DNA of 64,000 nt from IMGVR_UViG_3300035698_029839:62001-126000, one strand, 5' to 3'. Counted from the stretch's first letter, positions 33,023 through 61,829 are shown. Made by a program: numbers and translations. The notes: generated from the sequence alone by a model not told the origin.

Positions 33023-33667
33023 ATGAATAGAACATTAATAGTTATACTTACATGGAATCGTTTGGAAAAAACTAAACATACCCTTAAGACTTTAAAAAAA
33101 CATAATGGTAGAGATCTAGATTTTTTATTCGTTGATAATGGATCAACTGATGGTACTGTAGAATTTGTAGAAAGAAAAGGCTGGAAAATAATTAAGAACA
33201 AAACTAATGAGGGTATTTTTAGAGCCACTACTAAAGCTTGGATGGAAGGAGTTAAGATGGGATATGATTTTATTCTGAATCTTCAGAACGATTTCCCATG
33301 TTCACGAAGAATACCTTTTAATACTCTTGAGTCATATATGGACAATAATTCTGATGTTTGTTATATAAGGTTAAATAAGAAGAAAGATAAAAAGAAAAAT
33401 ATTGTCACAAATGCTCTTATTAAATATCAGGAGGAAGAGAAATTTGAAGACTATAGAATATTAAAATGTAATTACCATGCAGGTTTTAATCCTTCTATGA
33501 TTAGATCTACTATTATAAAAGACTATATAAAATATGATGGAGACAATCCGAGAGAACGTATTCTTATGAATAATTTTGAAAAAATGGGTAAGCAGTGTGC
33601 CAAATTGTATCCAGAAGTTTTTGAAACATTAAGACAGAACCATCATATACCAGGTTGGATACATTAA
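33023..33667 (+). CDS. GT2 glycosyltransferase
   Basis: VILTWNR, FVDNGSTDGT and NLQND motifs. Confidence 0.85.
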   Translation: MNRTLIVILTWNRLEKTKHTLKTLKKHNGRDLDFLFVDNGSTDGTVEFVERKGWKIIKNKTNEGIFRATTKAWMEGVKMGYDFILNLQNDFPCSRRIPFNTLESYMDNNSDVCYIRLNKKKDKKKNIVTNALIKYQEEEKFEDYRILKCNYHAGFNPSMIRSTIIKDYIKYDGDNPRERILMNNFEKMGKQCAKLYPEVFETLRQNHHIPGWIH

Positions 33668-34407
33668 TGGGTCTTTTTTTAAATCATGAATTTGATAAAA
33701 ATAATAGAACTAAAACTGTAGTTATATATGGTTGTGGATCTTCTTTGAATGATCTTACCGATTTAGATAGTTATGTTCTGAGCCAGTTCGATAGTGTGGC
33801 GTTCAACTGGTTTTGTTTTTCCCATATTCCTGTTACTTATTACTTAGTTAGAGAGCAGGCTAATATTCCTAAAAGAGTTCATGGAGAAGAGACAGTCGAT
33901 AATTTTTACAATTTAATTAACAAGTATTATAAAAAAAGTTGTTTAGTTATTCATGATTTATATAATCATTCTCCTAATGCTTATCCTTACTGGCATGTCA
34001 ATAATGAAAAAGAATTTATTCCTAATTCTATTTATGTGCAAGATACAAAATTAAAAGGGAATGATCCAGGAGTGGATAGGTGGGGGAAAGAGAATATTTT
34101 GAAAGATGGTATATATCATGGAAAAACTACATTAACTAATACTTTACATTTTGCGGTATGGATGGGTTATGAAAGAATTATTTTTGTTGGTATAGATCTT
34201 TATGATTCTAAATATTTTTGGTTGAAAGATAATGAAACAAGATATTCTGTAAAGAATAAGAAAAAGACAAAAGATTCTAAGCACCAAGCGGCAAAGGACA
34301 CTTTGGGTTTAATTGAAAAAGTTAAAAAAATTTATCCAGATATAGAAATGTATACATATAATAAAAAATCTTTGTTATCTGGTGTTATTGGGGTGTGGAA
34401 TAGCTAA
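33667..34407 (+). CDS. Maf/DUF115 (Cst-II sialyltransferase-like) protein 1
   Basis: VVIYGCGSSL, VAFNW and GYERIIFVGIDLY motifs; TAATG-coupled start. Confidence 0.65.
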   Translation: MGLFLNHEFDKNNRTKTVVIYGCGSSLNDLTDLDSYVLSQFDSVAFNWFCFSHIPVTYYLVREQANIPKRVHGEETVDNFYNLINKYYKKSCLVIHDLYNHSPNAYPYWHVNNEKEFIPNSIYVQDTKLKGNDPGVDRWGKENILKDGIYHGKTTLTNTLHFAVWMGYERIIFVGIDLYDSKYFWLKDNETRYSVKNKKKTKDSKHQAAKDTLGLIEKVKKIYPDIEMYTYNKKSLLSGVIGVWNS

Positions 34408-34921
34408 GCCAAGAAATAAAAGATATGAGTATATCCTTAAACATCTTAAGAGATTAAGAGTAAGGCCAGGTTCAGTAGTTATCGATTGTGCTTGTGGAGA
34501 TGGATATGGATCTAGTATTTTAAATTCAGCAGATATGAGTGTTATAGGGTATGATATATCAGAAGAATTAGTATTTGCAGCTATCGAAAGAGGCATAGAA
34601 GCAGATATATCTAATATTTGTAATCTTCCATGCGAAGATGATATGGCTGATGTATTTGTTTGTTCAGAAACGCTGGAACATTTAGATAAACAAGAATCTC
34701 AAAAGGCAGTTAATGAAATAAAAAGAACTACTAAAAAAAATGGAATTATTTGTGTGACGGTTCCATCAGATCCTAAGTTGTGTCTTAGAAATAAAAATCA
34801 TAAACAATATTTATCTTTGAAAAATTTGAAAGATATTTTTAGCGATTGTCATATATTATTTCATGGAGAGTTTTGTAAGAAACCAGGAAAATGTAATACA
34901 GTAGTTTTTTTTAGAAAATAG
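34382..34921 (+). CDS. Class I methyltransferase (start uncertain)
   Basis: VIDCACGDGYG, GYDIS and VCSETLEHL motifs. Confidence 0.85.
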   Translation: MLLGCGIAKPRNKRYEYILKHLKRLRVRPGSVVIDCACGDGYGSSILNSADMSVIGYDISEELVFAAIERGIEADISNICNLPCEDDMADVFVCSETLEHLDKQESQKAVNEIKRTTKKNGIICVTVPSDPKLCLRNKNHKQYLSLKNLKDIFSDCHILFHGEFCKKPGKCNTVVFFRK

Positions 34922-34923
34922 AT

Positions 34924-35784
34924 ATGAACATACTTTTTGTAACTGATAAACAAGGCAGGATTCAGTATAACAGGGCAAAGATATTACAAAATTTAATTAA
35001 GAATCATTCAATAGAAGTCGCCACATTAAAAGATAGAAATATTAATTGGAAGAGATATGATTTAATTTACTATTCTCATTTTTCCCTGCATAAGAAAATT
35101 CCTGCTCCAGAAAATAAAACAATTCTCACATCTATAACTAGTCATAAATGTTTGTCAGATTTTAAAAAGACTTTAAAAATTTTAGATAAGTTTGATAGAG
35201 TATCGGTCAATAATACAATTCTGTTTGATAAATTTAAAGATAATATTAAAAACTTATATTACACTCCTAATGGGGTAGACACTTCTTTTTTCGCACCTGA
35301 TTATAATGATCTTCATGATGATATTATTTTTGGGTGGGTTGGGAATATTGATAGAGCTACTAAAAGGTATAATGAAATTGTTATTCCTTTGAGTAAGAAA
35401 TATACTTTCAAGATAATAGGGACTTCTAAAAAAGATTGTATAGATAAATTATTAAACAAGCAAGAGATGAGAGATTATTATAATAGTATCGATTATTTTG
35501 TTGTTTCTAGTGATACGGAGGGAACTCCAAATCCTGCTCTTGAGGCCATGTCCTGTGGTATTCCTGTAATAACCACTAAAGTGGGCAATATGATAGAGAT
35601 TGTTGATTCTGGGGTATCTGGTTTCTTTGTAGAGGGTGATATGCAATCATTTATAGATGTTATAAAAAATTTATCAAAAAGTGATTACCAAGAAATGTGT
35701 ATTAAATCTAGAAATAGGATTGAATCATGGGATTGGTCGATAAAATATAGGGATTGGTGTAATTTTTTATTTAATAAAGGTTAG
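34924..35784 (+). CDS. GT4 glycosyltransferase
   Basis: TPNGVD and EGTPNPALEAMSCGIPV motifs. Confidence 0.9.
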   Translation: MNILFVTDKQGRIQYNRAKILQNLIKNHSIEVATLKDRNINWKRYDLIYYSHFSLHKKIPAPENKTILTSITSHKCLSDFKKTLKILDKFDRVSVNNTILFDKFKDNIKNLYYTPNGVDTSFFAPDYNDLHDDIIFGWVGNIDRATKRYNEIVIPLSKKYTFKIIGTSKKDCIDKLLNKQEMRDYYNSIDYFVVSSDTEGTPNPALEAMSCGIPVITTKVGNMIEIVDSGVSGFFVEGDMQSFIDVIKNLSKSDYQEMCIKSRNRIESWDWSIKYRDWCNFLFNKG

Positions 35785-35787
35785 TTT

Positions 35788-36660
35788 ATGGCAAACATAG
35801 ATTTTATTACTTTTTTGACCAGGCACTCGTCAGCATATGCTGCTTTTCTTAGAAAAACAGGAGAAGCTCTTAAAAGTAATAAGCATAATATTTTATGGAA
35901 ATGTGTTTTATCTAATAAAGCGAAAAAAATTCCAGAAAATTATGAGAATATTAATAAAGTTAATTTTGCTGTAAAGAATTCATCGCTAAGACATGGCTTA
36001 ACAATTAACTCGACCTTGCCCAAGGTTTCTAGTGACTATGTTATTATATCAGATGTAGATGTAGCTATGACATATAAAAATTGGGACGATGAAATTGTAA
36101 AAATCTTAGATGGAGATTATTCATGTTTTGGCTCTGAAAATATTGTAAGAGAAAGGGAGCATTTACATTTTCCTAATGTGCCTTTCTTTTGTTTTAAAAA
36201 AGATATCATGAAAGAAATACAATTAGATTTTACACCAAGAATGAAAAATGGTGATCTCGAGAGATTGATTATAAAAACTAAGGAAGAGGCAGAATTTTAC
36301 GAAAAAAAGATAGGAGAAATAGTAATTTTTAATAGCGGAAGTAGATTGTATAAGCTTTTTAAAGAATCTGGGTTAAAAGGTAAAAGTTTATCTCCAGTAT
36401 TAATTGGATCTAATGATATTCAACTAGAATTTATGAGCAAAAAAGAAAAAGGTGATATATTAAAAGATAATGAAATATCTACTCGTGGTTTATCAGAATT
36501 TCATTATAATGGAAATGTGTTTTTAACACATGTTGGAAGAAGTCATAAAAGAAATTTTAAAATAGGTTATATTAAAAACTGGGTAGAGAGAATTCAAAAA
36601 TATGTTAAAAAGAAATATAATATAGTTTTAAGGAATGAGCCGTATGGATATAAAACTTAA
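35788..36660 (+). CDS. GT-A-like protein (paralogue of 38009)
   Basis: SDYVIISDVDVAMTYKNWD motif. Confidence 0.6.
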   Translation: MANIDFITFLTRHSSAYAAFLRKTGEALKSNKHNILWKCVLSNKAKKIPENYENINKVNFAVKNSSLRHGLTINSTLPKVSSDYVIISDVDVAMTYKNWDDEIVKILDGDYSCFGSENIVREREHLHFPNVPFFCFKKDIMKEIQLDFTPRMKNGDLERLIIKTKEEAEFYEKKIGEIVIFNSGSRLYKLFKESGLKGKSLSPVLIGSNDIQLEFMSKKEKGDILKDNEISTRGLSEFHYNGNVFLTHVGRSHKRNFKIGYIKNWVERIQKYVKKKYNIVLRNEPYGYKT

Positions 36661-37348
36661 TAAATTTAATTGTTGTGATTTTTCTAAAGTAGATTCTATA
36701 GGAGTGATGTGTAGAGGAAGATCTTTGGGAAGCATAGGAGAATATAAAAAGCATTTTAAAAATATATTTATTGTGGGTCAACATGTGAGATCTCTTAGTC
36801 TTATAGGAAAATATGTTAAGGGGGCTAATATGGTGAGAGTGTGGGGAAGTACTTACGATAAGCCATCTGTAGAAGTTAAAGCGATGTATAAAGAGTATAA
36901 TATAAGAGATATTCAAACATATTTAGCTCCTACTGTGAGCGATAGAAAAGCTCATAAATTTAAAAAACTTTTTAAGAGATTTTCTGATTTAGCGCAGGTA
37001 TTTCCTCTTCCTTTGAATTTTCATCAAAGAAACAAGAGATTTATTTTAAAGAGAAAATATAGAGATAGAGAGAGATTGCATCATCCTACTTTGGGGTTGT
37101 ATGGTGTTGATTTGGCTTGTGCCTACAAACCTATATCAATTCATATTATAGGTTTAGATTTCTATACTGTCCCTGATTTTGTAGCGGAAAAAAATCATAT
37201 TAATATTGCTAAAAATGCGCCTAGATGCCATGGGATGATCGAATATTTTAAGTTATTGTGTAAAGAAGAATCAGATATACAATTTTATTTATACACATGC
37301 TGTAAAACAATAAAGAGTGAAGGTAATTTAAAAGTCATAAGAGTATGA
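36635..37348 (+). CDS. Maf/Cst-II-like protein 2 (divergent)
   Basis: IGVMCRGRSL and IHIIGLDFY motifs. Confidence 0.5.
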   Translation: MSRMDIKLNKFNCCDFSKVDSIGVMCRGRSLGSIGEYKKHFKNIFIVGQHVRSLSLIGKYVKGANMVRVWGSTYDKPSVEVKAMYKEYNIRDIQTYLAPTVSDRKAHKFKKLFKRFSDLAQVFPLPLNFHQRNKRFILKRKYRDRERLHHPTLGLYGVDLACAYKPISIHIIGLDFYTVPDFVAEKNHINIAKNAPRCHGMIEYFKLLCKEESDIQFYLYTCCKTIKSEGNLKVIRV

Positions 37349-38016
37349 TAAAATTGCATGGAATGATAGATGTTTTTATTATAACAAATGGACGTTCTAC
37401 TTTTGAGTATTGTAAAAAATCTATTAAGAATCAGTTGGGAGTGCATTTTAGTCCTATTTATATTAGAGATAAGGACTGGCAGGAATCTCATGAAATATTA
37501 TTAAAAAAGTGTAGATCTAATTATGCTCTTAGAGTAGATGATGATATGCTCCTTCACCAATTAGCTTTAAAATTCATGTATAAATGTATTAAAAACCAGA
37601 ATAGTAATATAGCTTTAAGAGGATGGAGGTTATGGGAGCCGTGGAGTAATAAGATTTGTAAGGGTATTAAGGTATATAATACTAAAATAGCAAGACAAAT
37701 AGGTTTTAAATTAGATCATTTGGGAAAAATTGATAAGCCGTTTACAAAAAATGCAGAAAAAGCTGGTTATAAAATAAAATATTCTAAAGATATAGTTGCT
37801 ATTCATTCTTGCGGCACTTTTGATGAGCATTTTAAATATTGGGTAATGAGGGGAGAATCAAATGGTAAAAAATTTGAAGAAAAAAGGAAGTGGGCTAAGA
37901 ATCTTATAGAAAATTGTCCTTATAGTTTAAAAGAGCAATATAATTTAAATAAAAAATTTATTCCAAAAGAGAATATTAAAAGAGGGACGAAATTCGGAGA
38001 CTTTTTAAATGAATAA
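37345..38016 (+). CDS. GT2-like protein
   Basis: VFIITNGR and LRVDDDMLLH motifs. Confidence 0.6.
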   Translation: MIKLHGMIDVFIITNGRSTFEYCKKSIKNQLGVHFSPIYIRDKDWQESHEILLKKCRSNYALRVDDDMLLHQLALKFMYKCIKNQNSNIALRGWRLWEPWSNKICKGIKVYNTKIARQIGFKLDHLGKIDKPFTKNAEKAGYKIKYSKDIVAIHSCGTFDEHFKYWVMRGESNGKKFEEKRKWAKNLIENCPYSLKEQYNLNKKFIPKENIKRGTKFGDFLNE

Positions 38017-38845
38017 AATTGATTTATTTACATTCGTCTATGCTGATTTATATAAGTATGCGGAACTATTTCATAGATCTTGTGAAGCAATGAAGAGTGG
38101 TGATGTTGAAATTAATTATAAATGTATAGAATCTATTTCTATGGATAAAAAACCAGAAGGATATAAACGTGTTGCCACAACAGGCAAGAGTAATAAAGGA
38201 GATTCTTTTAATCATTCTATTGCTGTGAATGAGGCATTTAATCATATTGAGAGTAAATATGTTATTTTTGCTGATGCAGACGTAGCTATTACTTACAAGG
38301 ACTGGGATAAGGTAGTTATAGATAAATTAGATTCTGGATTGTCATGTTTCGGTTTCGATTATTATAGGAAGTCAAGACGTTATTTTAATTTTCCTAATAT
38401 TTATTTCTTTGCTTTTAATAATGAATTGATTAGTGATGTTAATTTGGATTTTAGACCTAGAATAAGTAATGGGAAAATAGACGATGAAAATATTGATACT
38501 GATCAAAAATCTTATCTTTCAGGCAAACCATTTGGCGAATATATTAAATGTGATACAGGATGGAACGTTCCTTTTACTATTAAGGGTGCTGGGTTGAAAG
38601 GAGAATCTATTCCTTGTTTTAGAAGTGATACGGAGGGTCAAATTTTACCATTTAGAAATGATAAGCAAAAGAAATTATCCTTTAAGAAGCATAGGTTAAT
38701 GAATGAGTTTATTTACAATGGAGAATTATTTGGAACTCATTTGAAGAGATGTAGATTTAATAATTATGATAGCAAATATGGAAAAATATGGAGAGATAGA
38801 ATTTCTTTATATTTTAATAAAAAGTATGGTATTAAATTTGAATAG
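38009..38845 (+). CDS. GT-A-like protein (paralogue of 35788)
   Basis: SKYVIFADADVAITYKDWD and KCDTGW motifs. Confidence 0.62.
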   Translation: MNKIDLFTFVYADLYKYAELFHRSCEAMKSGDVEINYKCIESISMDKKPEGYKRVATTGKSNKGDSFNHSIAVNEAFNHIESKYVIFADADVAITYKDWDKVVIDKLDSGLSCFGFDYYRKSRRYFNFPNIYFFAFNNELISDVNLDFRPRISNGKIDDENIDTDQKSYLSGKPFGEYIKCDTGWNVPFTIKGAGLKGESIPCFRSDTEGQILPFRNDKQKKLSFKKHRLMNEFIYNGELFGTHLKRCRFNNYDSKYGKIWRDRISLYFNKKYGIKFE

Positions 38846-38849
38846 CAAT

Positions 38850-39755
38850 ATGAAAAAAATATTATTCAATATTTTAACGTGTAACAGATTTTATTATTTT
38901 AAAAATTGTATAGAATCAATTATTAAATGTGTTGATATGAATTGTATTGATATATTGATATGTGATAACAATACTATTGAAAAAGGTTTTGATGAATATG
39001 TTAATAATTTATGTTCTAAACATAGTAATATTGTTATTAAGAAATTCACTGATAGGACAAGAGGTGAATTATATAGAGCTATGAACTGGGCTATTGACTA
39101 CGCAAAAAAGAACGAATATGGGATAATAAATTTTATTCAAGATGATATCCAATATCTTTATAATATACCTTCTCATTTGGATGATATCGTTAATATTTTT
39201 GAAAATTATAAAAATATAGTTCAAATTAATTGTAATTTAGCATGGAGAAGAAAAATAGACAAGATCGGAAAAATTAAAAATATAGAAACTAACGGTCATA
39301 AATATGGGATATTGTTAGATAAGAGAGCTTGCGATAGCGGGTTTACAAGGGTGGCTATTTACGATCAAATAGGGAGTTATCCGATGGAAGCTATAAGCTG
39401 GGGGATGGAAAAAGATAGATATGTGGGTAAAACTAATGGGGAGATATGGTTTGGTAAAAGATGTTATAAGCATGGTTATAATAGAGCATTAACTTATCAT
39501 GCTAATTCGGGAATGATTTTTGATTGTGCCTATGTCAGAGGTGATGAAAGATATGGAAATTACTTTCCTGCTCCTAAAGAATTTTATTTTAAAATGCTTG
39601 ATAAATCTCATATTAGAAAAATAAGGGAAAGATCTAAAAAGAATAAGTTTTCTTATATGGAAGATTTTTGCATACCTGATGGATGGAAACCTAAAACATA
39701 TGGGAAGCATGGAGATATTAATATTATAAATAAAATTGGAGAACAGAATGAGTAA
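38850..39755 (+). CDS. GT2-like glycosyltransferase
   Basis: ILTCNR, ILICDNNT and FIQDD motifs; start moved to ATG 38850. Confidence 0.7.
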   Translation: MKKILFNILTCNRFYYFKNCIESIIKCVDMNCIDILICDNNTIEKGFDEYVNNLCSKHSNIVIKKFTDRTRGELYRAMNWAIDYAKKNEYGIINFIQDDIQYLYNIPSHLDDIVNIFENYKNIVQINCNLAWRRKIDKIGKIKNIETNGHKYGILLDKRACDSGFTRVAIYDQIGSYPMEAISWGMEKDRYVGKTNGEIWFGKRCYKHGYNRALTYHANSGMIFDCAYVRGDERYGNYFPAPKEFYFKMLDKSHIRKIRERSKKNKFSYMEDFCIPDGWKPKTYGKHGDINIINKIGEQNE

Positions 39756-40569: not shown

Positions 40570-40572
40570 TAT

Positions 40573-53710: not shown

Positions 53711-53722
53711 AAGGAAAAGAAT

Positions 53723-54349
53723 ATGGTAAAAGGAGAAACTTCTGAAGAAAGAAAAAAGAGAAAATTAGCGAAAAAAAGAGAAAATAGAAGACAGAGGAAA
53801 GAAAGAAGAATACAGAGAGGAGAACGTCATAATAATATTTTAAGAGAAATAAAAGATATAGATGTAGAATTAATATATTATCCATATCGTACTTGGGATG
53901 AACCGTATGTAAAATATTGGAGACAAAATAATGGGCACCTATTAAGATTTATTAATTGCCCATGGGCATTATTTATTGAAGATTATGTGAGATTGGGAGA
54001 TAAGATATGGAGAGATTTAGACAATCATATTTTTATTCAATGGGAACGTGATATATTCTTAACAGCTAATAGGAAGGTAGATAGGCTGGAGAGAGAAAAG
54101 ATTGAAAAAGGTACTCATTCAATAAAAGCAGCTTTAAGGTTGATAAAATTGGCAAACAGTATACAAAAGTATGGATATTGTAAGGGGGTACATGCTGTAG
54201 ATAAGAATCTTATTAATGTTGTAGCGAATTACACATCTCCACATGGAGGTAGTGGATATAGAGTATTATGGGGGAATCATAGAGCAGCGGTATGTGCTGG
54301 TCTGGGGATGAAAAAAATAAAAGTGAGATGTTGGGATTCTTATTCTTAA
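53723..54349 (+). CDS. ParB/Srx-like domain protein with basic N-terminal extension
   Basis: NSIQKYGY...YRVLWGNHRAAVCAGLGMKKIKV motif. Confidence 0.62.
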   Translation: MVKGETSEERKKRKLAKKRENRRQRKERRIQRGERHNNILREIKDIDVELIYYPYRTWDEPYVKYWRQNNGHLLRFINCPWALFIEDYVRLGDKIWRDLDNHIFIQWERDIFLTANRKVDRLEREKIEKGTHSIKAALRLIKLANSIQKYGYCKGVHAVDKNLINVVANYTSPHGGSGYRVLWGNHRAAVCAGLGMKKIKVRCWDSYS

Positions 54350-54406
54350 ATTATAAAATTAAGGGTAAATGATATAAAAAAGTTATGTAAAAGAAGAGAG
54401 AATTAA

Positions 54407-55480
54407 ATGAAAAAAGTTTTTGTTTCTGGATGTTATGATATTATTCATGGAGGACACATCCAGTTTTTTAAGGATGCTAAAAAATATGGAGATTTTTTAA
54501 TTGTTAATATAGCTTCTGATGAAGTTATTAAATTAGCTAAAAATAAAAGACCTTCATTACCAGTTGAGCATAGGATATCAATTTTAGAATCATTAGAAAT
54601 AGTGGATAAAGTTTATGTTAGTAGCGATGTTGATAGTGTGTTAGATTTTAAAACTAATTTTATAAATGAGAAACCTGATTTACTAGTGTTTTCTGGAGAT
54701 GAAAAAAACAAAGATATTAAGAAAGAGTTTTGTAAAGAAGTTGGATCAGAGTGTGTCCAGATAGATAAGATTAATCCTTTTAATTATGATTCATCAATTT
54801 CTACTTCTAAAATAATTAATCTGGTTAAAAGACCAAAGAAAATACCTTTAAGAGTAGATTTTGCTGGCGGTTGGTTAGATGTCCCTTCTTTATCAAGACA
54901 AAATGCTTTTATAGTTAATTGTACAATTAATAAATTTATGGATGAAGATTGTGAGTTCGATCCAGGAGCTGGTGTAGGAGGATCTGCTGCTTACTGGCTT
55001 TATAAGGGACAGAATACATTAGAAAGTGAGTTAAAGAATGGAGCTGGATGGCAAGATCCTGCTGTTATTACAGAAACAGGATTATGTGTGTGGAGGTCTG
55101 GTATGATTCCTATTTTGGAATTAAAAATAAATCCTGATTTCCTAAATAATAAAATGGCTCTTTTATATGATAGAACTCCTCATGATACTCCCTCACTAAG
55201 AGAAATAGAAAGAGATTATAAATTGATTGAAGAAGCAGGATCTAAAGCTTATGAGGCAGTTATTAACAAAAATTTATTTCTTCTTAATGATGCGGTCGAT
55301 ATATCTTATAAAGCTCAATTAAAAGAGGGAATGAATAAATTAAAATCGTATGGAGAGATGAGTAAAAAATATTGTGGTTCAGGATGGGGAGGATGTTCTT
55401 TATATGTTTTTTATAATCATGAAAGAGTTCCTGACAATATGATAAAAATACAACCATATATAAGAAATATTGACGAATAG
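54407..55480 (+). CDS. Cytidylyltransferase (TagD/RfaE-like) fused to a GHMP sugar-kinase domain
   Basis: GCYDIIHGGH and SISTSKI, then PLRVDFAGGWLD, PGAGVGGSAA, GWQD and CGSGWGG. Confidence 0.85.
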   Translation: MKKVFVSGCYDIIHGGHIQFFKDAKKYGDFLIVNIASDEVIKLAKNKRPSLPVEHRISILESLEIVDKVYVSSDVDSVLDFKTNFINEKPDLLVFSGDEKNKDIKKEFCKEVGSECVQIDKINPFNYDSSISTSKIINLVKRPKKIPLRVDFAGGWLDVPSLSRQNAFIVNCTINKFMDEDCEFDPGAGVGGSAAYWLYKGQNTLESELKNGAGWQDPAVITETGLCVWRSGMIPILELKINPDFLNNKMALLYDRTPHDTPSLREIERDYKLIEEAGSKAYEAVINKNLFLLNDAVDISYKAQLKEGMNKLKSYGEMSKKYCGSGWGGCSLYVFYNHERVPDNMIKIQPYIRNIDE

Positions 55481-55509
55481 ATTATAAGTTAAAAGATACA
55501 GGAGATAAT

Positions 55510-56328
55510 ATGACCAAAGTAGGAATTATAGGTTATGGAATTATAGGAAAAGCAGTATTAAAAATGTTTAAGGACAAAGTAGAACTTTGTGTTCATGATA
55601 TAAATATTTCTACTGATGATAAAATATATTTAAATATGGTTGGAATAGAATATTCTGATAAGGAAGAAATTAATAGTTGTGATATTGCTTTTGTTTGTGT
55701 CCCTACCCCACATAATAAGTATGATGGCTTGGATATGTCTATTGTTGAAAGTGTTATAAAAGAGTTTAATCCAGGAATGTTTGTTATATGTTCTGCTTTA
55801 CAACCTGGCACAGCAGATATTTTAATGAATAAATATGGAAAGAAAATAGTTGTACAGCCAGAATATTTTGGAGAGACAACGAATCATCCTCTTACTAATT
55901 TATCTCAAAATCCATTTATGATTTTAGGCGGTAAAAATGAAGATGTTGATGAAGTCATAAAACTTTATCAAAAAGTTTATAATGCTAATATCAGAATTAG
56001 AAAGGTGACAGCTTTAGAAGCTGAAGTGATTAAACTTTCTGAGAATAGAGCTATAGCATATAAGGTTGCTCAATGTCAAGAATTGTATGATGCTTGTAAA
56101 AATTCTAAGGTAGATTATGAAACTATTAGACAAGCTGTTTATGGGGATGACCCAAGATTTAATTTATGGTGGACTTTTGTTTATGAAGATAACAGAGGTA
56201 TGAATAGTAAGTGTATTCCTAAGGATGTTTACGGGTGGTATAGGTGGGCAGATGATTCAGGAGTTAATCCACGATTAACTGAAGCCTTATTAGATTATAA
56301 CCACAGTTTAGTAAAGAAAGATGAGTAA
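55510..56328 (+). CDS. UDP-glucose/GDP-mannose dehydrogenase family protein (short, intein-free)
   Basis: GIIGYGIIG, CVPTP and divergent catalytic GMNSKCIPKD; lacks the C-terminal UDP-binding domain. Confidence 0.82.
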   Translation: MTKVGIIGYGIIGKAVLKMFKDKVELCVHDINISTDDKIYLNMVGIEYSDKEEINSCDIAFVCVPTPHNKYDGLDMSIVESVIKEFNPGMFVICSALQPGTADILMNKYGKKIVVQPEYFGETTNHPLTNLSQNPFMILGGKNEDVDEVIKLYQKVYNANIRIRKVTALEAEVIKLSENRAIAYKVAQCQELYDACKNSKVDYETIRQAVYGDDPRFNLWWTFVYEDNRGMNSKCIPKDVYGWYRWADDSGVNPRLTEALLDYNHSLVKKDE

Positions 56329-57421
56329 TATGAAAGATACTATTGGAGTAATTGGTTGCGGTTTTGTGGGGAAGGCAGTTGTAAAAGGTTTCGAGCAATT
56401 TGCAGATGTTAAAATCTATGATACGGATGAAAAAAAATCAATACATGATTTTAAAGAAGTAGTAAATTGTGATTTTGTTTTTATATGTTTGCCTACACCA
56501 ATGATATCATCAGAAGGAGGAAGAGCTAATTTATCAATACTTGAGAAATGTATGGAAGATATTAGTAATGTAGAAAATAGAAATAAAGATTCTATTTATG
56601 TTATTAAATCGACAGTCCCAATTGGGACAACAAAAAGATTTGTATCTCAGTATAAAAATTTGCGTATAGTTCATAATCCAGAATTTCTAACTGCACGTTC
56701 TGCTATAATAGATTTTATTTGTCCTGCAAGAAATATTGTTGGTGCAGATTGGGGACGTGATGGCAAACCTGTTCAGGATTTATTAATAGATAGATTTCCA
56801 GGTACTCGTTGTATAGCTATGACATCTGAAGAATCAGAAACGGTTAAATATATGGCAAATTCTTTTTTAGCAACAAAGGTTATATTTTTCAATGAAATGA
56901 GATTGCTAGTTGATAAGAAAAATTTAGACTGGGATAGAGTCATAAGTGGAGTTATGTCAGATGGTAGGATAGGAACTTCTCATTATCAAGTACCAGGACA
57001 TGATGGGGACAGGGGTTTTGGTGGATTGTGTGTTTTACCTGATGCTAAAGTTAGTGTGAGTAGTAATTTTTGTTACTTCCCAGAATTTTTAAATGATGAA
57101 GATAGTAGCTATATGAGAAGTCATGCTTATTCTAATAGGGAAATAAGAATAGAAGATTTATATGACGAATTTAAAGATAGAAAGAAATTTCATTTTTTGT
57201 TAATACAATCTTGCAATGATAAAATAGAAGAAATTGAAGATAAATATATCAGAGATGTGACTGTTAGGGATATAGATGAAGAAATTTATTGTTTTGAAAC
57301 TTCAAATGGTTTGTTTCGTTGCACATCTAATCATTTAATGCCTGTCGAAAGACAAGGAAAAATAATTATTATTCCTGCAAAAGAAATAAAGGAAACGGAT
57401 TTGCTTTTCTCGAAAGTATAA
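56321..57421 (+). CDS. ugd: UDP-glucose 6-dehydrogenase N-extein (236 aa) plus split intein N-fragment (130 aa)
   Basis: GCGFVG, KSTVP, NPEFL, KYMANSFLATK and GFGGL, then intein block A CVLPDAKV from 57029 and block B CTSNHLMPV. Confidence 0.92.
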   Translation: MSNMKDTIGVIGCGFVGKAVVKGFEQFADVKIYDTDEKKSIHDFKEVVNCDFVFICLPTPMISSEGGRANLSILEKCMEDISNVENRNKDSIYVIKSTVPIGTTKRFVSQYKNLRIVHNPEFLTARSAIIDFICPARNIVGADWGRDGKPVQDLLIDRFPGTRCIAMTSEESETVKYMANSFLATKVIFFNEMRLLVDKKNLDWDRVISGVMSDGRIGTSHYQVPGHDGDRGFGGLCVLPDAKVSVSSNFCYFPEFLNDEDSSYMRSHAYSNREIRIEDLYDEFKDRKKFHFLLIQSCNDKIEEIEDKYIRDVTVRDIDEEIYCFETSNGLFRCTSNHLMPVERQGKIIIIPAKEIKETDLLFSKV

Positions 57422-58364
57422 TGGATAAACAGGTTTCTTAAAATACTGGATAGAAAATGTTAATAGAATATTTATCAGAAAAAATTAATACAAAAACGAA
57501 TATAAGGTTCAAATGTGATCAGTGTGGAAACTTATATATTAGGAATAATAAACCATATATAAATATGAAAAAAAGTATTTATTATGATAAGGATTATTGT
57601 TGTTTATGCTGGAGAAAAATTTTAAATAATCGTCCTGAATATAAAAAGAATATGAGTATATCTATACGGAAGATGTATGAAGATCATCCAGAGATAAGAA
57701 GTAAAATTTCTAAAACTTTGAAAAAAAATGGGGCAAATATAGGGAATAAAAATGGGATGAAACAAATTAAAGCAAGAATAAAGGCATCGATGACAAGAAA
57801 AAAAAAGTTTTTAGATCCAGTTTTTAGAAAAGCTCATTCTGATATGATTAAAAAGGCGTGGGCAGATGGTAAATTTGATGGAGTTAGAGTTGGGCAGTGT
57901 AAATGGCATGAATATAAACATTCTAATGGGAATGTTTATAAAGTTCAGGGAACATGGGAGCTAGCATTTATAAAATGGTTAGATGAAAATAATTTGAAAT
58001 TTAAATGCCATAGAGGAAGAATTCCATACAGAATTAAAGGGGAAAATAGAAATTATTATCCAGATTTTTGGGTTGATAAATGGGATGCTTTTATCGATGT
58101 AAAGTGTAGATATTTTTATGATATAAGTAAGAATAAGTTTAAAGCTATAAAAAAAAGTAATCCAAATATAAATATAAAAATTTTATTTAAAAAAGATTTA
58201 TTAAAATTAGGAGTTGTTTTGTGAAAAAAATAAAAATTAATAAAATAAAAAAAGAAAGCTATAAGGGTAAAGTTTATAATCTTGAATTAGAAACAGAAAA
58301 TTTTGATACTGATGGAGATGATTTGTTCTGGATAGAGCAGGAAACAGGAATTGTTACTCATAAT
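57029..58364 (+). mobile_element. Split intein plus free-standing endonuclease (fractured-gene element)
   Basis: IntN 57029-57421, endonuclease 57457-58224 and IntC 58221-58364, each in a different reading frame. Confidence 0.88.
57457..58224 (+). CDS. Free-standing homing endonuclease: NUMOD3-like basic region plus PD-(D/E)xK (TnsA-N-like) nuclease domain
   Basis: CDQCG...CCLC; EIRSKISKTLK; VQGTWELAFIKWLD, IPY and YYPDFWV...FIDVK motifs. Confidence 0.8.
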   Translation: MLIEYLSEKINTKTNIRFKCDQCGNLYIRNNKPYINMKKSIYYDKDYCCLCWRKILNNRPEYKKNMSISIRKMYEDHPEIRSKISKTLKKNGANIGNKNGMKQIKARIKASMTRKKKFLDPVFRKAHSDMIKKAWADGKFDGVRVGQCKWHEYKHSNGNVYKVQGTWELAFIKWLDENNLKFKCHRGRIPYRIKGENRNYYPDFWVDKWDAFIDVKCRYFYDISKNKFKAIKKSNPNINIKILFKKDLLKLGVVL

Positions 58365-58523
58365 TGCTTTAGTAAAGATATTAATTCTTTAATTGATACC
58401 ATGGAAAAGGAAGGTCTTGATCCATTGGTTTTAAAAGCAGTATGGGAACAAAATAAAAGAGTTAGAAAAAAATGGGACTGGGCCGATGAGTCTTCAGCCG
58501 TTTTAGGGGAGGAAAAGTCATGA
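58221..58523 (+). CDS. ugd: Split intein C-fragment (48 aa) plus dehydrogenase C-extein (52 aa)
   Basis: GTG start with SD AGGAG at 58209-58213; block F KVYNLELE; block G GIVTHN, then CFSKDINSL. Confidence 0.92.
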   Translation: MKKIKINKIKKESYKGKVYNLELETENFDTDGDDLFWIEQETGIVTHNCFSKDINSLIDTMEKEGLDPLVLKAVWEQNKRVRKKWDWADESSAVLGEEKS

Positions 58524-59251
58524 GTGTTGTAAGGGGGGTTATATTAGCAGGTGGACATGGGAAGAGACTTTATCCTATGACTAAGGTTATAAATAAGCAT
58601 TTATTGAATGTTTATAATAAACCCATGATTTATTACCCGATAGAGACTATGATTAATGCTGGGATTGATCAAATTATGATAGTAACAGGGGGAAATAATG
58701 CAGGTAGTTTTTTGGAGCTTATTGGGAATGGGGAAGAGTTCGGATTAAAAGAAATGCACTATTCTTATCAAAAAGGAGCAGGAGGTATAGCGGAAGCTTT
58801 ATCTTTAGCAGAGAATTTTACGGCTGGAGATAAGTTTGTAGTTATTTTAGGAGATAATATACTAGAAAAAAGTATTAAGCCTTATGTGGATAATTTTAAA
58901 TGTCAACAAGGAGGAGCAAAAATACTTTTAACTAAGTCTATGACTCCAGAACGTTTTGGGGTAGCGGAGATTGACGATAATAATAATGTTACTTGTATAG
59001 TTGAGAAGCCACGAGAACCTAAAAGTGACAGTATAGTTATTGGCGTATATATGTATGATGGAGAAGTTTTCGAAGCTATTAAACAACAACAACGTTCTGA
59101 CAGAGGAGAATTAGAGATTACTGATGTGAATAATTATTATATAGAAAAGAGTAAGCTAACAAGTGATTTTATTGATGGATGGTGGACAGACGCTGGGACT
59201 ATTCCTTCTCTATTTAAAGCCAATGCGTTACTAAAGGATAATAATGAGTAA
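58520..59251 (+). CDS. rmlA: Glucose-1-phosphate thymidylyltransferase (short form)
   Basis: ILAGGHGKRLYPMT, EKP, SDRGELEITD and WWTDAGT motifs. Confidence 0.93.
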   Translation: MSVVRGVILAGGHGKRLYPMTKVINKHLLNVYNKPMIYYPIETMINAGIDQIMIVTGGNNAGSFLELIGNGEEFGLKEMHYSYQKGAGGIAEALSLAENFTAGDKFVVILGDNILEKSIKPYVDNFKCQQGGAKILLTKSMTPERFGVAEIDDNNNVTCIVEKPREPKSDSIVIGVYMYDGEVFEAIKQQQRSDRGELEITDVNNYYIEKSKLTSDFIDGWWTDAGTIPSLFKANALLKDNNE

Positions 59252-60068
59252 TATAATTTTTGGAAACGGTTTTATAGGTAATATTTTAAATAATAAGTTA
59301 GATGATTATGAATTATCAGATTTAAACCCATTATTTTATGGAACTCTTTGTAAGGCATTAGATGTACATAAACCAGAAGTTATTATTAATTGTATTGGTA
59401 AAACAGGAAGACCCAATATAGATTGGTGCGAGAATAATAAAGAAGATACAATATTATCCAATATCGCCGTACCATCAATACTTGCATCTGAATGTTCTAA
59501 AAGAGGTATATATTTTGTCCATATGGGAAGCGGTTGTATTTATTCTGATAGGGACGGAGAGAATAATTTTTCTGAAGATGATGAACCAAATTTCTATAAA
59601 TATCAGACTTACGCAAGAACTAAAATATTAGCTGAAAAAATTGTTAAAAATGTACCCTCTTTGCAGGTGCGTATTAGAATGCCTATTTGTTCTTATCCTC
59701 ATGATAGAAATTTAATAACAAAATTATCAAAGTATGAAAAAGTAATTGATATTAAAAATTCTATGACAGTTATAGAGGATTTTTTACCTGTGTTTAAGAC
59801 ACTTGTAGATAATAGGGCTACGGGTATATATAATGTTGTGAATGAAGGGGCTATATCTGCTTATGAGATTATGAAGTTGTATGCAGAAATTGTAGATTTA
59901 TCATATAGGGTGTCTTTATTAAGTAAAGAAGAGTTAAATAGGATAACAGTTGGTGAAAGATCCAATTGTATTATTTTGTCGGAAAAGATTAAAAAATATG
60001 GAATATCTATGCCCAATATAAGAGAATCTATAGAGAAAGTTCTTTATGAATATAAGGAAAATTTATGA
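59244..60068 (+). CDS. rmlD: NRS/ER-type NDP-4-keto-6-deoxyglucose 3,5-epimerase/4-reductase (RmlD-like)
   Basis: GNGFIG, GKTGRPNIDWCE, GSGCIY, RIRMPI and RSNC motifs. Confidence 0.85.
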   Translation: MSNIIFGNGFIGNILNNKLDDYELSDLNPLFYGTLCKALDVHKPEVIINCIGKTGRPNIDWCENNKEDTILSNIAVPSILASECSKRGIYFVHMGSGCIYSDRDGENNFSEDDEPNFYKYQTYARTKILAEKIVKNVPSLQVRIRMPICSYPHDRNLITKLSKYEKVIDIKNSMTVIEDFLPVFKTLVDNRATGIYNVVNEGAISAYEIMKLYAEIVDLSYRVSLLSKEELNRITVGERSNCIILSEKIKKYGISMPNIRESIEKVLYEYKENL

Positions 60069-61009
60069 ATATATTAGTTACGGGCGGTGCGGGTTTTATA
60101 GGCTCTAATTTTATAGAAATACTTTTAGAAAAAACAAATCATAATATTGTAGTTTATGATTGTTTAACATATGCTGGTAATATAAATAATATTAAAGAAT
60201 TTATAGAAGATCGAAGATTAACTTTTGTAGAAGGCGATATACGAAATGGAAGTGTTGTTGATTGTTCTATAAAGAGTACTGATGTGGTTGTTAACTTTGC
60301 AGCGGAGACTCATGTTGATAATAGTATTTCATCTTGTAAGGATTTCTTAACTACCAATATTATTGGGACTGCTGTGTTGGCTGATTCAGCTATAAAATAT
60401 AAGGTTAAGAAATTTGTTCAAATATCTACAGATGAGGTTTATGGAGCTATTAATTACCCACATTCTTCTATAGAAACAGATGTATTAAAACCTCAGAATC
60501 CATATAGTGCTTCTAAGGCTTCTGCTGATATGTTGTTACTTTCTTATTATAACACTTATAAATTTCCAGTTGTTATAACAAGGTGCACTAATAATTATGG
60601 GAAGAAACAATATCCTGAGAAAATTATACCTTTATTTATATCAAATTTAATGAATGATAAAAAGGTTCCTGTCTATGGAGATGGGCTACAAATAAGAGAC
60701 TGGATACATGTAAGTGATCATTGCAATGCTATTCTTAATGTTATGGAAAAAGGAAGGGTTGGGGAGGTATATAATATAGGTTCTTCCAATGAAATTAAAA
60801 ATATTGATTTAACAAAAATTTTAATAAGTAAAATGGAAAAAGATGAAACATCTATAAAATATGTAGAAGATCGTCTTGGACACGATAAAAGATATTCTTT
60901 AAATACCGAAAAAATAAAAAATGAGCTAGAATGGAAATCTGTAGTTAATTTTGAAGAAGGAATTGATTCTACTGTCAAATGGTACAAAGATGCATTTCAA
61001 CAGAAATAA
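60065..61009 (+). CDS. rmlB: dTDP-glucose 4,6-dehydratase
   Basis: GGAGFIGSN, TYAGN, AAETHVDNS, STDEVYG, PYSASK and DRLGHDKRY motifs. Confidence 0.95.
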   Translation: MNILVTGGAGFIGSNFIEILLEKTNHNIVVYDCLTYAGNINNIKEFIEDRRLTFVEGDIRNGSVVDCSIKSTDVVVNFAAETHVDNSISSCKDFLTTNIIGTAVLADSAIKYKVKKFVQISTDEVYGAINYPHSSIETDVLKPQNPYSASKASADMLLLSYYNTYKFPVVITRCTNNYGKKQYPEKIIPLFISNLMNDKKVPVYGDGLQIRDWIHVSDHCNAILNVMEKGRVGEVYNIGSSNEIKNIDLTKILISKMEKDETSIKYVEDRLGHDKRYSLNTEKIKNELEWKSVVNFEEGIDSTVKWYKDAFQQK

Positions 61010-61829
61010 AATAAAACAAAATAAATTAAAGATTTCTCCTAGGGGTGGAAAAAAAAAGAAAATAAAAACTGCTAGCTCAAATAAGATTGTTCGCCCTGTC
61101 AAGAAGTCTAAAAAGAAAAATAGAAAATTAAAAATAACTTCTACATCTGGTTCTAGTGCTTTAAATATTAAAAAATTCGGGGATAAATCTATTTATAAGC
61201 CTATGGATGAATGGAAAAATTTATTAGAAGGACATGTGGTATTTATACTAGGTAATTCTCCTGGGATATCTAAACAAAATTTAGATATTTTGAAACCTTA
61301 TTTTACGATAGGTATTAATAGAATATTTTATATTTATACTTCTACTATCTTAATGTGGCAAGATATTCAAATGTGGAACAGTGAAAAGAATAAAATAGCC
61401 AATAATAAATCATTAAGAATATGTAATACTGCTAGCGATCCTAGAAAATTTTTCTTAAATTTCAAAGTTAAGGGTGGAAGTTTTAAATTTGGTAAGAATC
61501 CTTCTGTTCTATATGGAACTGGAAATACGACAGCGCTTGCTGCTCAATTAGCTGTTAGTTTGGGTTGTTCAGATATAGTTTTATTGGGAACAGACTGTAA
61601 GTATCAGGGGGGTAAAACTGATTTTTATGGAAAGAATAAAGATCACAAATCATATACATTAAAAATGTGTGATACAGCCATGAAATGGATAAAAAATGAT
61701 TGTCCCATTCCAGTTCATAATTGTAGTAGTAATAAGTTATTACCAGAAGAGAATCTAATAGACGTTATAAAAAAATTAAGACCAGAAAAAATGAGTAGAA
61801 AAGAATATATAAGGAAATTCAAAATATAA
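60951..61829 (+). CDS. Maf/DUF115 (Cst-II-like) protein 4 with Lys-rich N-terminal extension (start may be 60990)
   Basis: VFILGNSPGI, FTIGINRI and GCSDIVLLGTDC motifs. Confidence 0.68.
   Translation: MKKELILLSNGTKMHFNRNKIKQNKLKISPRGGKKKKIKTASSNKIVRPVKKSKKKNRKLKITSTSGSSALNIKKFGDKSIYKPMDEWKNLLEGHVVFILGNSPGISKQNLDILKPYFTIGINRIFYIYTSTILMWQDIQMWNSEKNKIANNKSLRICNTASDPRKFFLNFKVKGGSFKFGKNPSVLYGTGNTTALAAQLAVSLGCSDIVLLGTDCKYQGGKTDFYGKNKDHKSYTLKMCDTAMKWIKNDCPIPVHNCSSNKLLPEENLIDVIKKLRPEKMSRKEYIRKFKI

What the first reader, a model, noticed from the sequence alone, without database searches (positions are those of the whole stretch)
33667..61829. Four Maf/DUF115 (Cst-II-like) proteins as candidate ulosonate transferases
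Seen: 33667, 36635, 44553 and 60951 share (I/V)xG.G.S/T, GxN and G...I.(I/L).G.D motifs. Established: Maf proteins have a sialyltransferase-like domain and attach nonulosonic acids directly to flagellin in the cytoplasm, without lipid carriers. Inference: with NeuA/KdsB donors these give a lipid-independent route to glycosylate proteins, fitting the absence of membrane machinery. Targets could be tail fibres, capsid or host flagellin.
Basis: partly seen in the sequence, partly recalled or inferred. Interest (0 to 1): 0.66.

Follow-up and report, generated by a model that had tools for sequence, protein, structure and literature searches.

The report
Megaphage sialyltransferase-like sugar-acid transferases
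A giant salt-lake bacteriophage carries six diverged copies of a sialyltransferase-like enzyme beside its own pathways for activated acidic sugars, so it probably builds an unusual acidic glycan, but what that glycan is attached to is still unknown.

Summary
All four ORFs are real, tightly packed genes in a glycan-biosynthesis island of about 54 kb. The island lies in a 298-kb megaphage fragment found only in salt-lake metagenomes.

- **Family:** all four belong to the sialyltransferase-like GT-A-variant superfamily (GT42 Cst-I/Cst-II, WaaZ, Maf/PF01973, MptE).
- **w33655, w44553, w60951:** these are linked by profile-profile comparison (90-98%). Their joint profile hits Cst-II over its full length (E 2e-9).
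- **w36635:** it has no Pfam hit. Its model (pLDDT 91) matches Cst-II/Cst-I best (Z 12.9), and its wider-family profile hits three GT42-type sialyltransferases (E 5e-7 to 1e-4).
- **w60951:** its model matches the Maf central domain best (Z 14.8) and MptE second (Z 12.3).
- **More copies:** two further paralogs lie upstream of the window. Related megaphages carry 5-7 copies.
- **Donors:** the phage encodes a NeuA-like and a KdsB-like cytidylyltransferase plus a third paralog, three NeuB synthases and an HpcH aldolase.

The reading as CMP-ulosonate transferases is well supported. The Maf-style reading (direct, lipid-free protein glycosylation) is not. The proteins are single-domain and lack Maf's flanking domains. 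Their closest characterised relatives extend lipid-anchored glycans. The lack of phage membrane genes does not discriminate between targets. I file this as a new member of a known kind, of moderate interest.

The parts
33667..34407 (+). w33655: GT42-like (Cst-II-like) transferase paralog, 246 aa from the ATG at 33667 (longest ORF starts at the TTG at 33655)
   Evidence: PF01973 at 27.5 bits, below the 34.6 cut-off. The family profile A3 hits Cst-II over its full length at E 2.5e-4 and Cst-I at 1.3e-3, with the G-x-G-x-S motif, the Asn31-equivalent and both Tyr156/Tyr162-equivalents conserved.
36635..37348 (+). w36635: divergent GT42-like transferase paralog, 237 aa, in a family not covered by Pfam
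   Evidence: No Pfam or PHROG hit. AF2 model pLDDT 90.8. Z 12.9 Cst-II, 12.5 Cst-I, 12.1 P. multocida LOS sialyltransferase, 10.7 Maf, 9.7 MptE, then a drop to 5.1. The wider-family profile A7 hits 9c08 at 4.9e-7, Cst-I at 1.1e-6 and Cst-II at 1.3e-4.
44553..45227 (+). w44553: GT42/DUF115-like transferase paralog, 224 aa
   Evidence: PF01973 at 22.8 bits, below the cut-off. hhalign to the w33655 family 90% and to the w60951 group 97.7%. The Atlas model matches bacterial fusion proteins carrying HMGL-like aldolase and CTP_transf_3 domains.
60990..61829 (+). w60951: Maf/WaaZ-like (PF01973-type) transferase paralog, 279 aa from the ATG at 60990, with a conserved Lys/Arg-rich disordered N-terminus of about 70 aa
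   Evidence: PF01973 at 26.8 bits; phrog_4603 'alpha-2,3-sialyltransferase' at 1.9e-11. AF2 model: Z 14.8 to Maf residues 257-527, 12.3 to MptE, 10.1 to Cst-I. Atlas: TM 0.82 to a bacterial MptE-like/WaaZ_KDO_III cluster. Orthologs are aligned.
29896..30606 (+). NeuA-like CMP-nonulosonate synthetase (donor activation)
   Evidence: PF02348 at 1.7e-25. The best PDB hits are all CMP-Neu5Ac synthetases, at 3.5e-24.
30593..32203 (+). Two tandem NeuB-family synthases (30593-31405 and 31409-32203)
   Evidence: PF03102 at 4.5e-48 and 1.2e-50. The nearest solved proteins are PseI, SpsE and NeuB.
3249..4796 (.). Third NeuB paralog (3249-4121, minus strand) and an adjacent HAD phosphatase (4227-4796, plus strand)
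   Evidence: PF03102 at 1.1e-52; HAD families. Paralogy shown.
46564..50000 (+). KdsB-like cytidylyltransferase (46564-47379), radical SAM (47379-48308), 2-hydroxyacid dehydrogenase (48305-49255) and HpcH/HpaI aldolase (49248-50000): a second ulosonate-type donor module
   Evidence: All the top PDB hits of w46564 are KdsB, at 1.3e-33. No KdsA was found in the fragment.
7806..61829 (+). Glycan island holding the above: at least 10 GT2/GT4 glycosyltransferases, about 11 methyltransferases, 3 radical SAM enzymes, a formyltransferase, sugar-nucleotide dehydrogenases and RmlA/RmlB/RmlD-like genes
   Evidence: Pfam scans. No multi-pass membrane protein.

Best explanation
The four ORFs, with two further paralogs upstream of the window, are soluble single-domain glycosyltransferases. 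They belong to the sialyltransferase-like GT-A-variant superfamily that holds GT42 (Cst-I/Cst-II), WaaZ (the Kdo-III transferase) and the Maf central domain.

The most likely mechanism is this. Each enzyme takes a CMP-activated 2-keto-3-deoxy sugar acid made by the phage's own modules. One module is NeuB synthases with a NeuA-like synthetase. Another is an HpcH aldolase, a dehydrogenase, a radical SAM enzyme and a KdsB-like synthetase. The enzyme transfers that acid, with release of CMP, onto a sugar of a glycan built by the island's many GT2/GT4 enzymes and decorated by its methyltransferases. Each paralog is a separately conserved lineage, so each probably has its own donor, acceptor or linkage.

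Shown here: fold, homology, donor genes, paralog conservation and the lack of phage membrane proteins. Inferred: the CMP-ulosonate donor, the glycan (rather than bare protein) acceptor, and the carrier of the glycan. The carrier could be a host lipid-linked glycan or a phage protein; this is undecided.
For: Structure and sequence:
- w36635 model: Z 12.9/12.5/12.1 to three sialyltransferases, then Maf, ST8SiaIII and MptE, then a gap to 5.1.
- w60951 model: Z 14.8 to the Maf central domain.
- Combined profile A6: Cst-II E 1.8e-9 over its full length, Cst-I 2.1e-7, MptE only 0.02.
- A3: Cst-II 2.5e-4 with the CMP-loop motif and both phosphate-binding Tyr equivalents conserved.
- A7: LOS sialyltransferase 9c08 at 4.9e-7.
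- E. coli WaaZ is homologous: hhalign 90.7% over 161 columns. WaaZ is described as the transferase of the third Kdo (PMC6358824).

Context:
- NeuA-like, KdsB-like and a third CTP_transf_3 gene, three NeuB genes and an HpcH aldolase lie in or next to the island.
- The Atlas model of w44553 matches bacterial proteins that fuse HMGL-like aldolase and CTP_transf_3 with a further domain.
- The w60951 model matches bacterial MptE-like domains fused to GT2 or TagF-like enzymes, and a WaaZ_KDO_III cluster.
- No pterin pathway partner (FolP) is present.

Conservation:
- Related megaphage records of 351 kb and 219 kb carry 6+1 and 4+1 members.
- Orthologs are 50-80% identical, while paralogs are under 25% identical.
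Against: - No activity was measured, and a shared fold does not prove function.
- None of the six matches the Pfam GT42 model PF06002.
- The four window proteins are below the PF01973 cut-off.
- A His at the place of the Cst-II catalytic His188 is plausible in the w33655 and w44553 families. It is not conserved in the w36635 family or in the w60951 group.
- The w36635 clade has replaced three residues that are conserved in its wider family: N48 to G, N71 to G, and Y181 to D/F.
- MptE is the second-best structural match of w60951 (Z 12.3), and profile A5 hits the N-terminus of MptE at 8e-5.
- The fragment lacks NeuC-, DegT- and KdsA-type genes, so the actual sugar acids are unknown.
Confidence: 0.62

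Rival explanations
1. One reading: Maf-like protein glycosyltransferases. The enzymes would add ulosonic acids directly to Ser/Thr of proteins (virion proteins or host flagellin) in the cytoplasm, without a lipid carrier.
For: - w60951 matches the Maf central domain best (Z 14.8, 201 residues).
- Maf enzymes do O-link Neu5Ac, Kdo, Pse and Leg directly to flagellin (10.1101/2020.06.03.131540).
- There is no phage-encoded flippase, polymerase or initiating transferase.
- The genome encodes a Cys-rich protein with a run of about 60 Ser, next to a glycosyltransferase paralog. This is a conceivable acceptor.
Against: - All six are single-domain proteins of 224-292 aa. They lack the N- and C-terminal domains of Maf, whose solved chain has 666 residues; the match covers only Maf residues 257-527.
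- Three of the four window proteins are nearer to GT42 enzymes, which act on glycans.
- More than 10 GT2/GT4 genes in the island argue for a composite glycan rather than single-sugar decoration.
- No acceptor was identified.
Confidence: 0.2
2. Some copies, above all the w60951 group, are not glycosyltransferases. They would be MptE/thiamine-pyrophosphokinase-like phosphotransfer enzymes acting on a small molecule.
For: - Their Pfam family is named after MptE.
- MptE is the second-best structural match of w60951 (Z 12.3, rmsd 3.2, 17% identity), and thiamine pyrophosphokinases appear at Z 8-9.
- Profile A5 hits the N-terminal region of MptE at 8.2e-5.
Against: - Maf scores higher (14.8), and the match to MptE by sequence covers only the N-terminal motif.
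- The context is sugar-nucleotide genes. The gene overlaps an RmlB-like dehydratase gene.
- No FolP is present.
- Five to seven copies per genome do not fit a single metabolic kinase.
- The PHROG family is labelled sialyltransferase.
- Bacterial look-alikes are fused to GT2 or TagF-like enzymes, or fall in a WaaZ_KDO_III cluster.
Confidence: 0.07
3. w36635 is a catalytically altered or inactive paralog. It would serve as a scaffold or specificity subunit rather than as an active transferase.
For: In the megaphage clade of w36635, three positions that are conserved in the wider family and in GT42 enzymes are replaced: N48 to G, N71 to G, and Y181 to D/F. No conserved His precedes the last helix.
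Against: - The clade keeps R27, G28, S30, T152, G154, G173, D175, F176 and Y177 invariant. It also has new invariant residues (Q49, G71, E185, N194), as expected for changed specificity rather than decay.
- The orthologs are 50-70% identical with no truncation.
Confidence: 0.1

Closest known systems
Campylobacter jejuni Cst-II / Cst-I and Pasteurella multocida LOS alpha-2,3-sialyltransferase (CAZy GT42; PDB 1ro7, 2p2v, 9c08)
   Same: - Single-domain proteins of about 220-290 aa with the same GT-A-variant fold.
- An N-terminal G-x-G-x-S nucleotide loop, an Asn after strand 2, the I-x-h-x-G-x-D-F/L-Y block, and a second Tyr in the w33655 family and the wider w36635 family.
- Full-length profile matches.
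- CMP-sugar pathway genes lie nearby.
   Different: - No match to the Pfam GT42 model PF06002.
- Identity is only 14-20%.
- A catalytic His188 equivalent is not conserved in two of the lineages.
- The genes are phage-borne, in 5-7 diverged copies.
- Donors and acceptors are unknown.
E. coli WaaZ (transferase of the third Kdo of the LPS inner core; listed from my own knowledge as CAZy GT73)
   Same: - A short single-domain protein, homologous by hhalign (90.7% with A6, 83% with A5).
- It transfers an octulosonic acid to a glycan (PMC6358824).
- Atlas clusters nearest to w60951 carry the WaaZ_KDO_III family.
   Different: - WaaZ acts on host LPS core in a waa operon.
- The Pfam WaaZ model (PF27901) is not in the local library, so membership could not be scored.
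Maf flagellin nonulosonic-acid transferases (PF01973 central domain; PDB 5mu5)
   Same: - Best structural match of w60951 (Z 14.8).
- The same superfamily.
- The invariant Asp of the G-x-D block sits where the critical Maf Asp is expected.
- Donors are CMP-Pse, CMP-Leg, CMP-Neu5Ac and CMP-Kdo.
   Different: - Maf has additional N- and C-terminal domains that are absent here. Its solved chain has 666 residues, and only residues 257-527 match.
- Maf genes lie next to flagellin genes; no such neighbour is seen here.
- The four window proteins score below the PF01973 cut-off.
MptE (archaeal 6-hydroxymethyl-dihydropterin pyrophosphokinase; PDB 8sd5)
   Same: The same fold class: Z 12.3 for w60951 and 9.7 for w36635. 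It shares the Pfam family name.
   Different: It is a kinase, not a transferase. There is no pterin pathway context here, and it ranks below the transferases in every comparison.
Viral look-alikes: phrog_4603 'alpha-2,3-sialyltransferase', 'MptE-like' proteins of uncultured Caudovirales, and the GT29 and DUF115 proteins of Mimiviridae sp. ChoanoV1
   Same: Short viral proteins with the same fold. This shows that the kind is already catalogued in viruses.
   Different: None of them is characterised. Among isolated phages, only three jumbo Brevundimonas phages have a detectable relative of w60951, and none has one of w33655.

Membership tests
GT42 sialyltransferases (Cst-I/Cst-II) | Match to the curated family model PF06002 (CST-I) | tested here: not met
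   No match at E<=10 anywhere in the 298-kb record. The control genomes also gave nothing, so the test is weak. hmmscan of the four proteins did not list PF06002.
GT42 sialyltransferases (Cst-I/Cst-II) | Full-length sequence-profile similarity to solved GT42 enzymes | tested here: met
   A6 to Cst-II 1.8e-9 and Cst-I 2.1e-7. A3 to Cst-II 2.5e-4. A7 to 9c08 4.9e-7, Cst-I 1.1e-6 and Cst-II 1.3e-4. A4 alone gave no hit.
GT42 sialyltransferases (Cst-I/Cst-II) | GT-A-variant sialyltransferase fold | tested here: met
   w36635: Z 12.9 (198 aligned, rmsd 3.8) to 1ro8 and 12.5 to 2p2v. w60951: Z 10.1 and 9.8. w33655 and w44553 were not folded here.
GT42 sialyltransferases (Cst-I/Cst-II) | Catalytic base His188 and phosphate-binding Tyr156/Tyr162 (residue roles recalled from the Cst-II literature, not re-read here) | tested here: inconclusive
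   Both Tyr are conserved in the w33655 family (Y179, Y183). A nearly invariant His lies 1-3 alignment positions from Cst-II His184/His188. In the wider w36635 family both Tyr are conserved (91/97 and 94/97), but w36635 itself has D/F at the second, and there is no conserved His. The w44553 family has an invariant His170. The w60951 group has none.
GT42 sialyltransferases (Cst-I/Cst-II) | CMP-sialic acid dependent transfer to a glycan acceptor | not testable with these tools
   This needs enzyme assays.
Maf (motility-associated factor) flagellin glycosyltransferases | Central Maf_flag10/PF01973 domain above the curated cut-off | tested here: not met
   w33655 27.5 bits, w44553 22.8 and w60951 26.8, against a cut-off of 34.6; w36635 has no hit. 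Only the upstream paralog at genome 53705-54412 passes, with 44.1 bits.
Maf (motility-associated factor) flagellin glycosyltransferases | Multi-domain architecture with N- and C-terminal domains flanking the catalytic domain | tested here: not met
   The proteins are 224-292 aa. The w60951 model aligns only to Maf residues 257-527 of a 632-residue chain. Its own N-terminus is a disordered basic tail.
Maf (motility-associated factor) flagellin glycosyltransferases | Critical acidic residues (E324 and D415 of M. magneticum Maf) and a conserved Ser | tested here: inconclusive
   The Asp of the G-x-D block is invariant in all families. An invariant Asp (D125) follows strand 3 in the w60951 group. 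No residue-level alignment to 5mu5 was available.
Maf (motility-associated factor) flagellin glycosyltransferases | Genomic association with flagellin and direct Ser/Thr O-linkage | not tested
   No flagellin search was run. The linkage needs mass spectrometry.
WaaZ-type Kdo transferases | Homology to E. coli WaaZ | tested here: met
   hhalign of A6 against WaaZ gives 90.7% over 161 columns, and A5 against WaaZ gives 83.2% over 103 columns. Nearest Atlas clusters carry PF27901 WaaZ_KDO_III.
WaaZ-type Kdo transferases | Match to the curated model PF27901 | not testable with these tools
   The model is absent from the local Pfam copy.
MptE-like pterin pyrophosphokinases | Fold similarity to MptE (8sd5) | tested here: met
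   Z 12.3 for w60951 and 9.7 for w36635, but always ranked below a transferase.
MptE-like pterin pyrophosphokinases | Pterin/folate pathway context | tested here: not met
   No Pterin_bind (FolP) match in the record. The neighbours are sugar-nucleotide and glycosyltransferase genes. The record is only about 62% complete.

The most novel reading that the evidence does not exclude
The megaphage runs an autonomous, membrane-independent glycosylation factory in the host cytoplasm. In this reading more than 10 GT2/GT4 enzymes, about 11 methyltransferases and six sialyltransferase-like enzymes assemble a heavily methylated glycan. The glycan would contain up to three different phage-made ulosonic acids, one from an aldolase/KdsB-like route with no KdsA. 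It would be built directly on virion or other phage proteins, for example the Cys-rich protein with a run of about 60 Ser. This would be the bacteriophage counterpart of the self-encoded glycosylation of chloroviruses and mimiviruses.
Probability: 0.2. Interest if true: 0.8.

Novelty: new member of a known kind. Interest (0 to 1): 0.5.

Why it matters
Transferases for nonulosonic and octulosonic acids are far less well known than the pathways that make these sugars. Very few families are characterised: GT42, WaaZ, Maf and a few others.

This locus offers six diverged, short, soluble members in one genome, each next to candidate donor pathways. One of them belongs to a family of about 190 sequence clusters that Pfam does not cover.

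If the enzymes are active, they would be a compact toolbox for glyco-engineering with unusual acidic sugars. They would also show that megaphages invest more than 50 kb in an acidic, methylated glycan. That glycan could disguise the virion, or it could remodel the host surface against competing phages.

The proteins themselves belong to a catalogued fold that is already labelled 'sialyltransferase' in PHROGs. The surprise therefore lies in the scale and context, not in the kind.

Tried and rejected
- **Phage databases.** Megablast of 13 kb of the island against 50,697 phage records found nothing. tblastn of w33655 found nothing. tblastn of w60951 found only three jumbo Brevundimonas phages at 26% identity.
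- **Single-sequence and narrow-profile PDB searches.** These were uninformative for w36635 (A2), w60951 and A4. Broader profiles were needed.
- **hhalign of the narrow w36635 alignment.** Against the other families it gave only 2-43% probability, limited to the G-x-D block. Taken alone this would have suggested no relationship. Structure and the wider profile A7 overturned that.
- **PF06002 (GT42 model).** No hit, and no control genome responded.
- **Virus type.** Terminase_6N and the NCLDV capsid models gave no hit. PHROG scans of the ten largest proteins found phage DNA polymerase, helicases and a methyltransferase, but no structural protein. Structural genes were therefore not located and no acceptor could be proposed from them.
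- **Alternative genetic code.** Rejected. Coding density under table 11 is 0.8-1.0 in the island, and recoding a stop gives no gain there.
- **Donor precursors.** NeuC (Epimerase_2), DegT aminotransferase and KdsA were not found. The classical Neu5Ac, Pse, Leg and Kdo routes therefore cannot be asserted.
- **Literature.** No open paper on the MptE structure was found. No paper on phage DUF115 proteins was found.

Full report
**Setting.** The window is bases 62001-126000 of a 297,710-bp linear IMG/VR virus record, about 62% complete by CheckV.
- G+C is about 29%, and almost all genes lie on the + strand.
- Table 11 reads the island without gaps, so no other code was used.
- PHROG hits to phage DNA polymerase and helicases mark it as a bacteriophage of megaphage size. 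So do a Tad5 anti-Thoeris gene and an Apyc1 anti-Pycsar gene just upstream.
- The DNA is found only in runs labelled salt lake metagenome.
- Related contigs of 219, 351 and 548 kb carry the same kind of island.

**The observation.** All four ORFs exist.
- The called start of the first is the ATG at 33667.
- Orthologs of the last start at the ATG at 60990.
- The three motifs are present only in degenerate form in two of the four.
- They are nevertheless exactly the invariant columns of a 70-sequence family alignment.

**Homology.**
- Ortholog alignments were built for each paralog.
- Profile-profile comparison links the families of w33655, w44553 and w60951 at 90-98% probability.
- Within the 426 ORFs of the genome, the family HMMs find only each other and two further paralogs at genome 53705-54412 and 57172-57891.
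- w36635 has no Pfam or PHROG hit and only 29 close relatives by word search. Its narrow profile touches the others only at the G-x-D block.
- I therefore folded w36635 and ran the exhaustive profile search on it.

**Fold of w36635.**
- The model is confident: pLDDT 90.8, pTM 0.90.
- Foldseek's first ten hits are all Cst-II or Cst-I.
- By VIA-align the order is Cst-II Z 12.9, Cst-I 12.5, P. multocida LOS sialyltransferase 12.1, Maf 10.7, ST8SiaIII 10.5, MptE 9.7 and SteA 8.5. The next match drops to 5.1.

**Wider family of w36635.**
- The exhaustive search found 189 cluster representatives at E<=1e-3.
- A 97-sequence alignment of these hits 9c08 at 4.9e-7, Cst-I at 1.1e-6 and Cst-II at 1.3e-4.
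- It reaches 93% with the w33655 family by hhalign, and it cross-hits members of the other group in related phages.
- Only 5 of 97 members touch PF01973, weakly, and none touches PF06002. This is a GT42-like branch that Pfam does not cover.
- Within it, the clade of w36635 has replaced three otherwise conserved positions: N48, N71 and Y181.

**Fold of w60951.**
- The model is pLDDT 74 overall and above 85 in most of the domain. The first 64 residues are disordered.
- It matches the Maf central domain best (Z 14.8, 201 residues). MptE follows at 12.3, then Cst-I at 10.1, SteA, Cst-II and thiamine pyrophosphokinases.
- In the ESM Atlas its nearest bacterial look-alikes are a cluster carrying MptE-like and WaaZ_KDO_III families (TM 0.82, rmsd 2.4). 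Others are MptE-like domains fused to GT2 or TagF-like enzymes.
- E. coli WaaZ, the transferase of the third Kdo (PMC6358824), is homologous to the combined family: 90.7% by hhalign.
- The combined profile is much closer to Cst-II (1.8e-9) than to MptE (0.02) or Maf (0.28).

**Donors.**
- w29896 is NeuA-like, and all its PDB hits are CMP-Neu5Ac synthetases. It is followed by two NeuB genes.
- A third NeuB, with a HAD phosphatase beside it, lies at 3249-4796.
- w46564 is KdsB-like. It is followed by a radical SAM enzyme, a 2-hydroxyacid dehydrogenase and an HpcH aldolase.
- A third CTP_transf_3 paralog lies upstream of the window.
- NeuC, DegT and KdsA homologs were not found. The sugar acids are therefore probably not the textbook ones.
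- The Atlas model of w44553 matches bacterial proteins in which an HMGL-like aldolase and a CTP_transf_3 domain are fused to a further domain. I read that as a fusion link between this fold and CMP-ulosonate metabolism. This is an inference, because the matched segment of the fusion is not reported.

**Island and membranes.**
- From about 7.8 to 61.8 kb the window holds at least ten GT2/GT4 genes and about eleven methyltransferases. It also holds three radical SAM enzymes, a formyltransferase, sugar-nucleotide dehydrogenases and RmlA/B/D-like genes.
- A hydropathy scan finds no multi-pass membrane protein in the island or the fragment.
Cst-II-type enzymes and WaaZ work on host lipid-anchored glycans, for which host carriers and exporters would suffice.

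**Verdict.**
- The enzymatic reading, CMP-ulosonate transferases, is well supported by fold, profile matches, homology to WaaZ, donor genes and fusion partners. It remains untested biochemically.
- The Maf-specific reading is not supported by architecture. It stays a minority possibility, strongest for w60951.
- The MptE-kinase rival is weak. There is no pterin context, there are 5-7 copies per genome, and a transferase ranks first in every comparison.
- Each paralog has its own orthologs in related megaphages at 50-80% identity, while paralogs share under 25%. The copies are therefore old and functionally distinct.
- Similar short proteins are already catalogued in viruses: phrog_4603, BFVD entries from uncultured Caudovirales, and ChoanoV1. 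Jumbo phages with surface-polysaccharide clusters have been discussed before (PMC7824862).
- I file this as a new member of a known kind, with an unusually rich context.

Noticed in passing
Genome 153628-155076 (L010:7628-9076, +), with a paralog at L010:4776-5822 and a 571-aa gene between them (L010:5901-7616): A Cys-rich 482-aa protein carries an uninterrupted run of about 60 Ser near its C-terminus. Its paralog has no such run. The gene between them groups by blastp with the island's GT2/GT4 genes. It is a conceivable O-glycosylation acceptor, untested.
   Followed up: partly
L001:10937-11533 and L001:16618-17400 (genome 54937-55533 and 60618-61400), just upstream of the window: A Tad5 (type I Thoeris inhibitor, 8e-32) gene and an Apyc1 (anti-Pycsar, 4e-19) gene sit between the two upstream DUF115 paralogs and the island. 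They point to a bacterial host.
   Followed up: no
window 60990-61200 (residues 1-70 of w60951): A Lys/Arg-rich, predicted-disordered N-terminal tail is conserved in the orthologs of two related megaphages. It is absent from the two upstream paralogs. Its function is unknown.
   Followed up: partly
Related contig of 547,943 bp (L003; JGI 3300033145): This contig carries orthologs of three of the four genes. At NCBI it is labelled as a 'Candidatus Asgardarchaeia archaeon' MAG. By gene content it looks like a megaphage, so the label is probably a binning error.
   Followed up: no
window 46564-50000: A KdsB-like cytidylyltransferase is coupled to a radical SAM enzyme, a 2-hydroxyacid dehydrogenase and an HpcH/HpaI aldolase, with no KdsA in the record. 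A similar trio (radical SAM/SPASM, dehydrogenase, NeuA-like) lies at 26903-30606. This may be a non-canonical route to a CMP-activated keto-deoxy acid.
   Followed up: partly
Homologs of w44553 (P0094, P0150): Some short homologs carry the source label '4-hydroxy 2-oxovalerate aldolase' (K01666). The label was probably transferred from bacterial fusion proteins that join an HMGL-like aldolase to this domain.
   Followed up: no
window 57457-58224 and 62669-63553: A phage endonuclease I-like/DUF7487 gene interrupts the sugar-nucleotide genes. An RlaP (RNA-repair-associated nucleotidyltransferase) gene follows the island.
   Followed up: no
L002:15301-17310 (related 219-kb contig): The dehydratase/epimerase gene of the related phage carries an intein (Intein_splicing, weak hit) and is 669 aa long.
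   Followed up: no
window 5574-6272: A phage-encoded peptide deformylase (PF01327, 1.8e-34) lies at the edge of the island.
   Followed up: no
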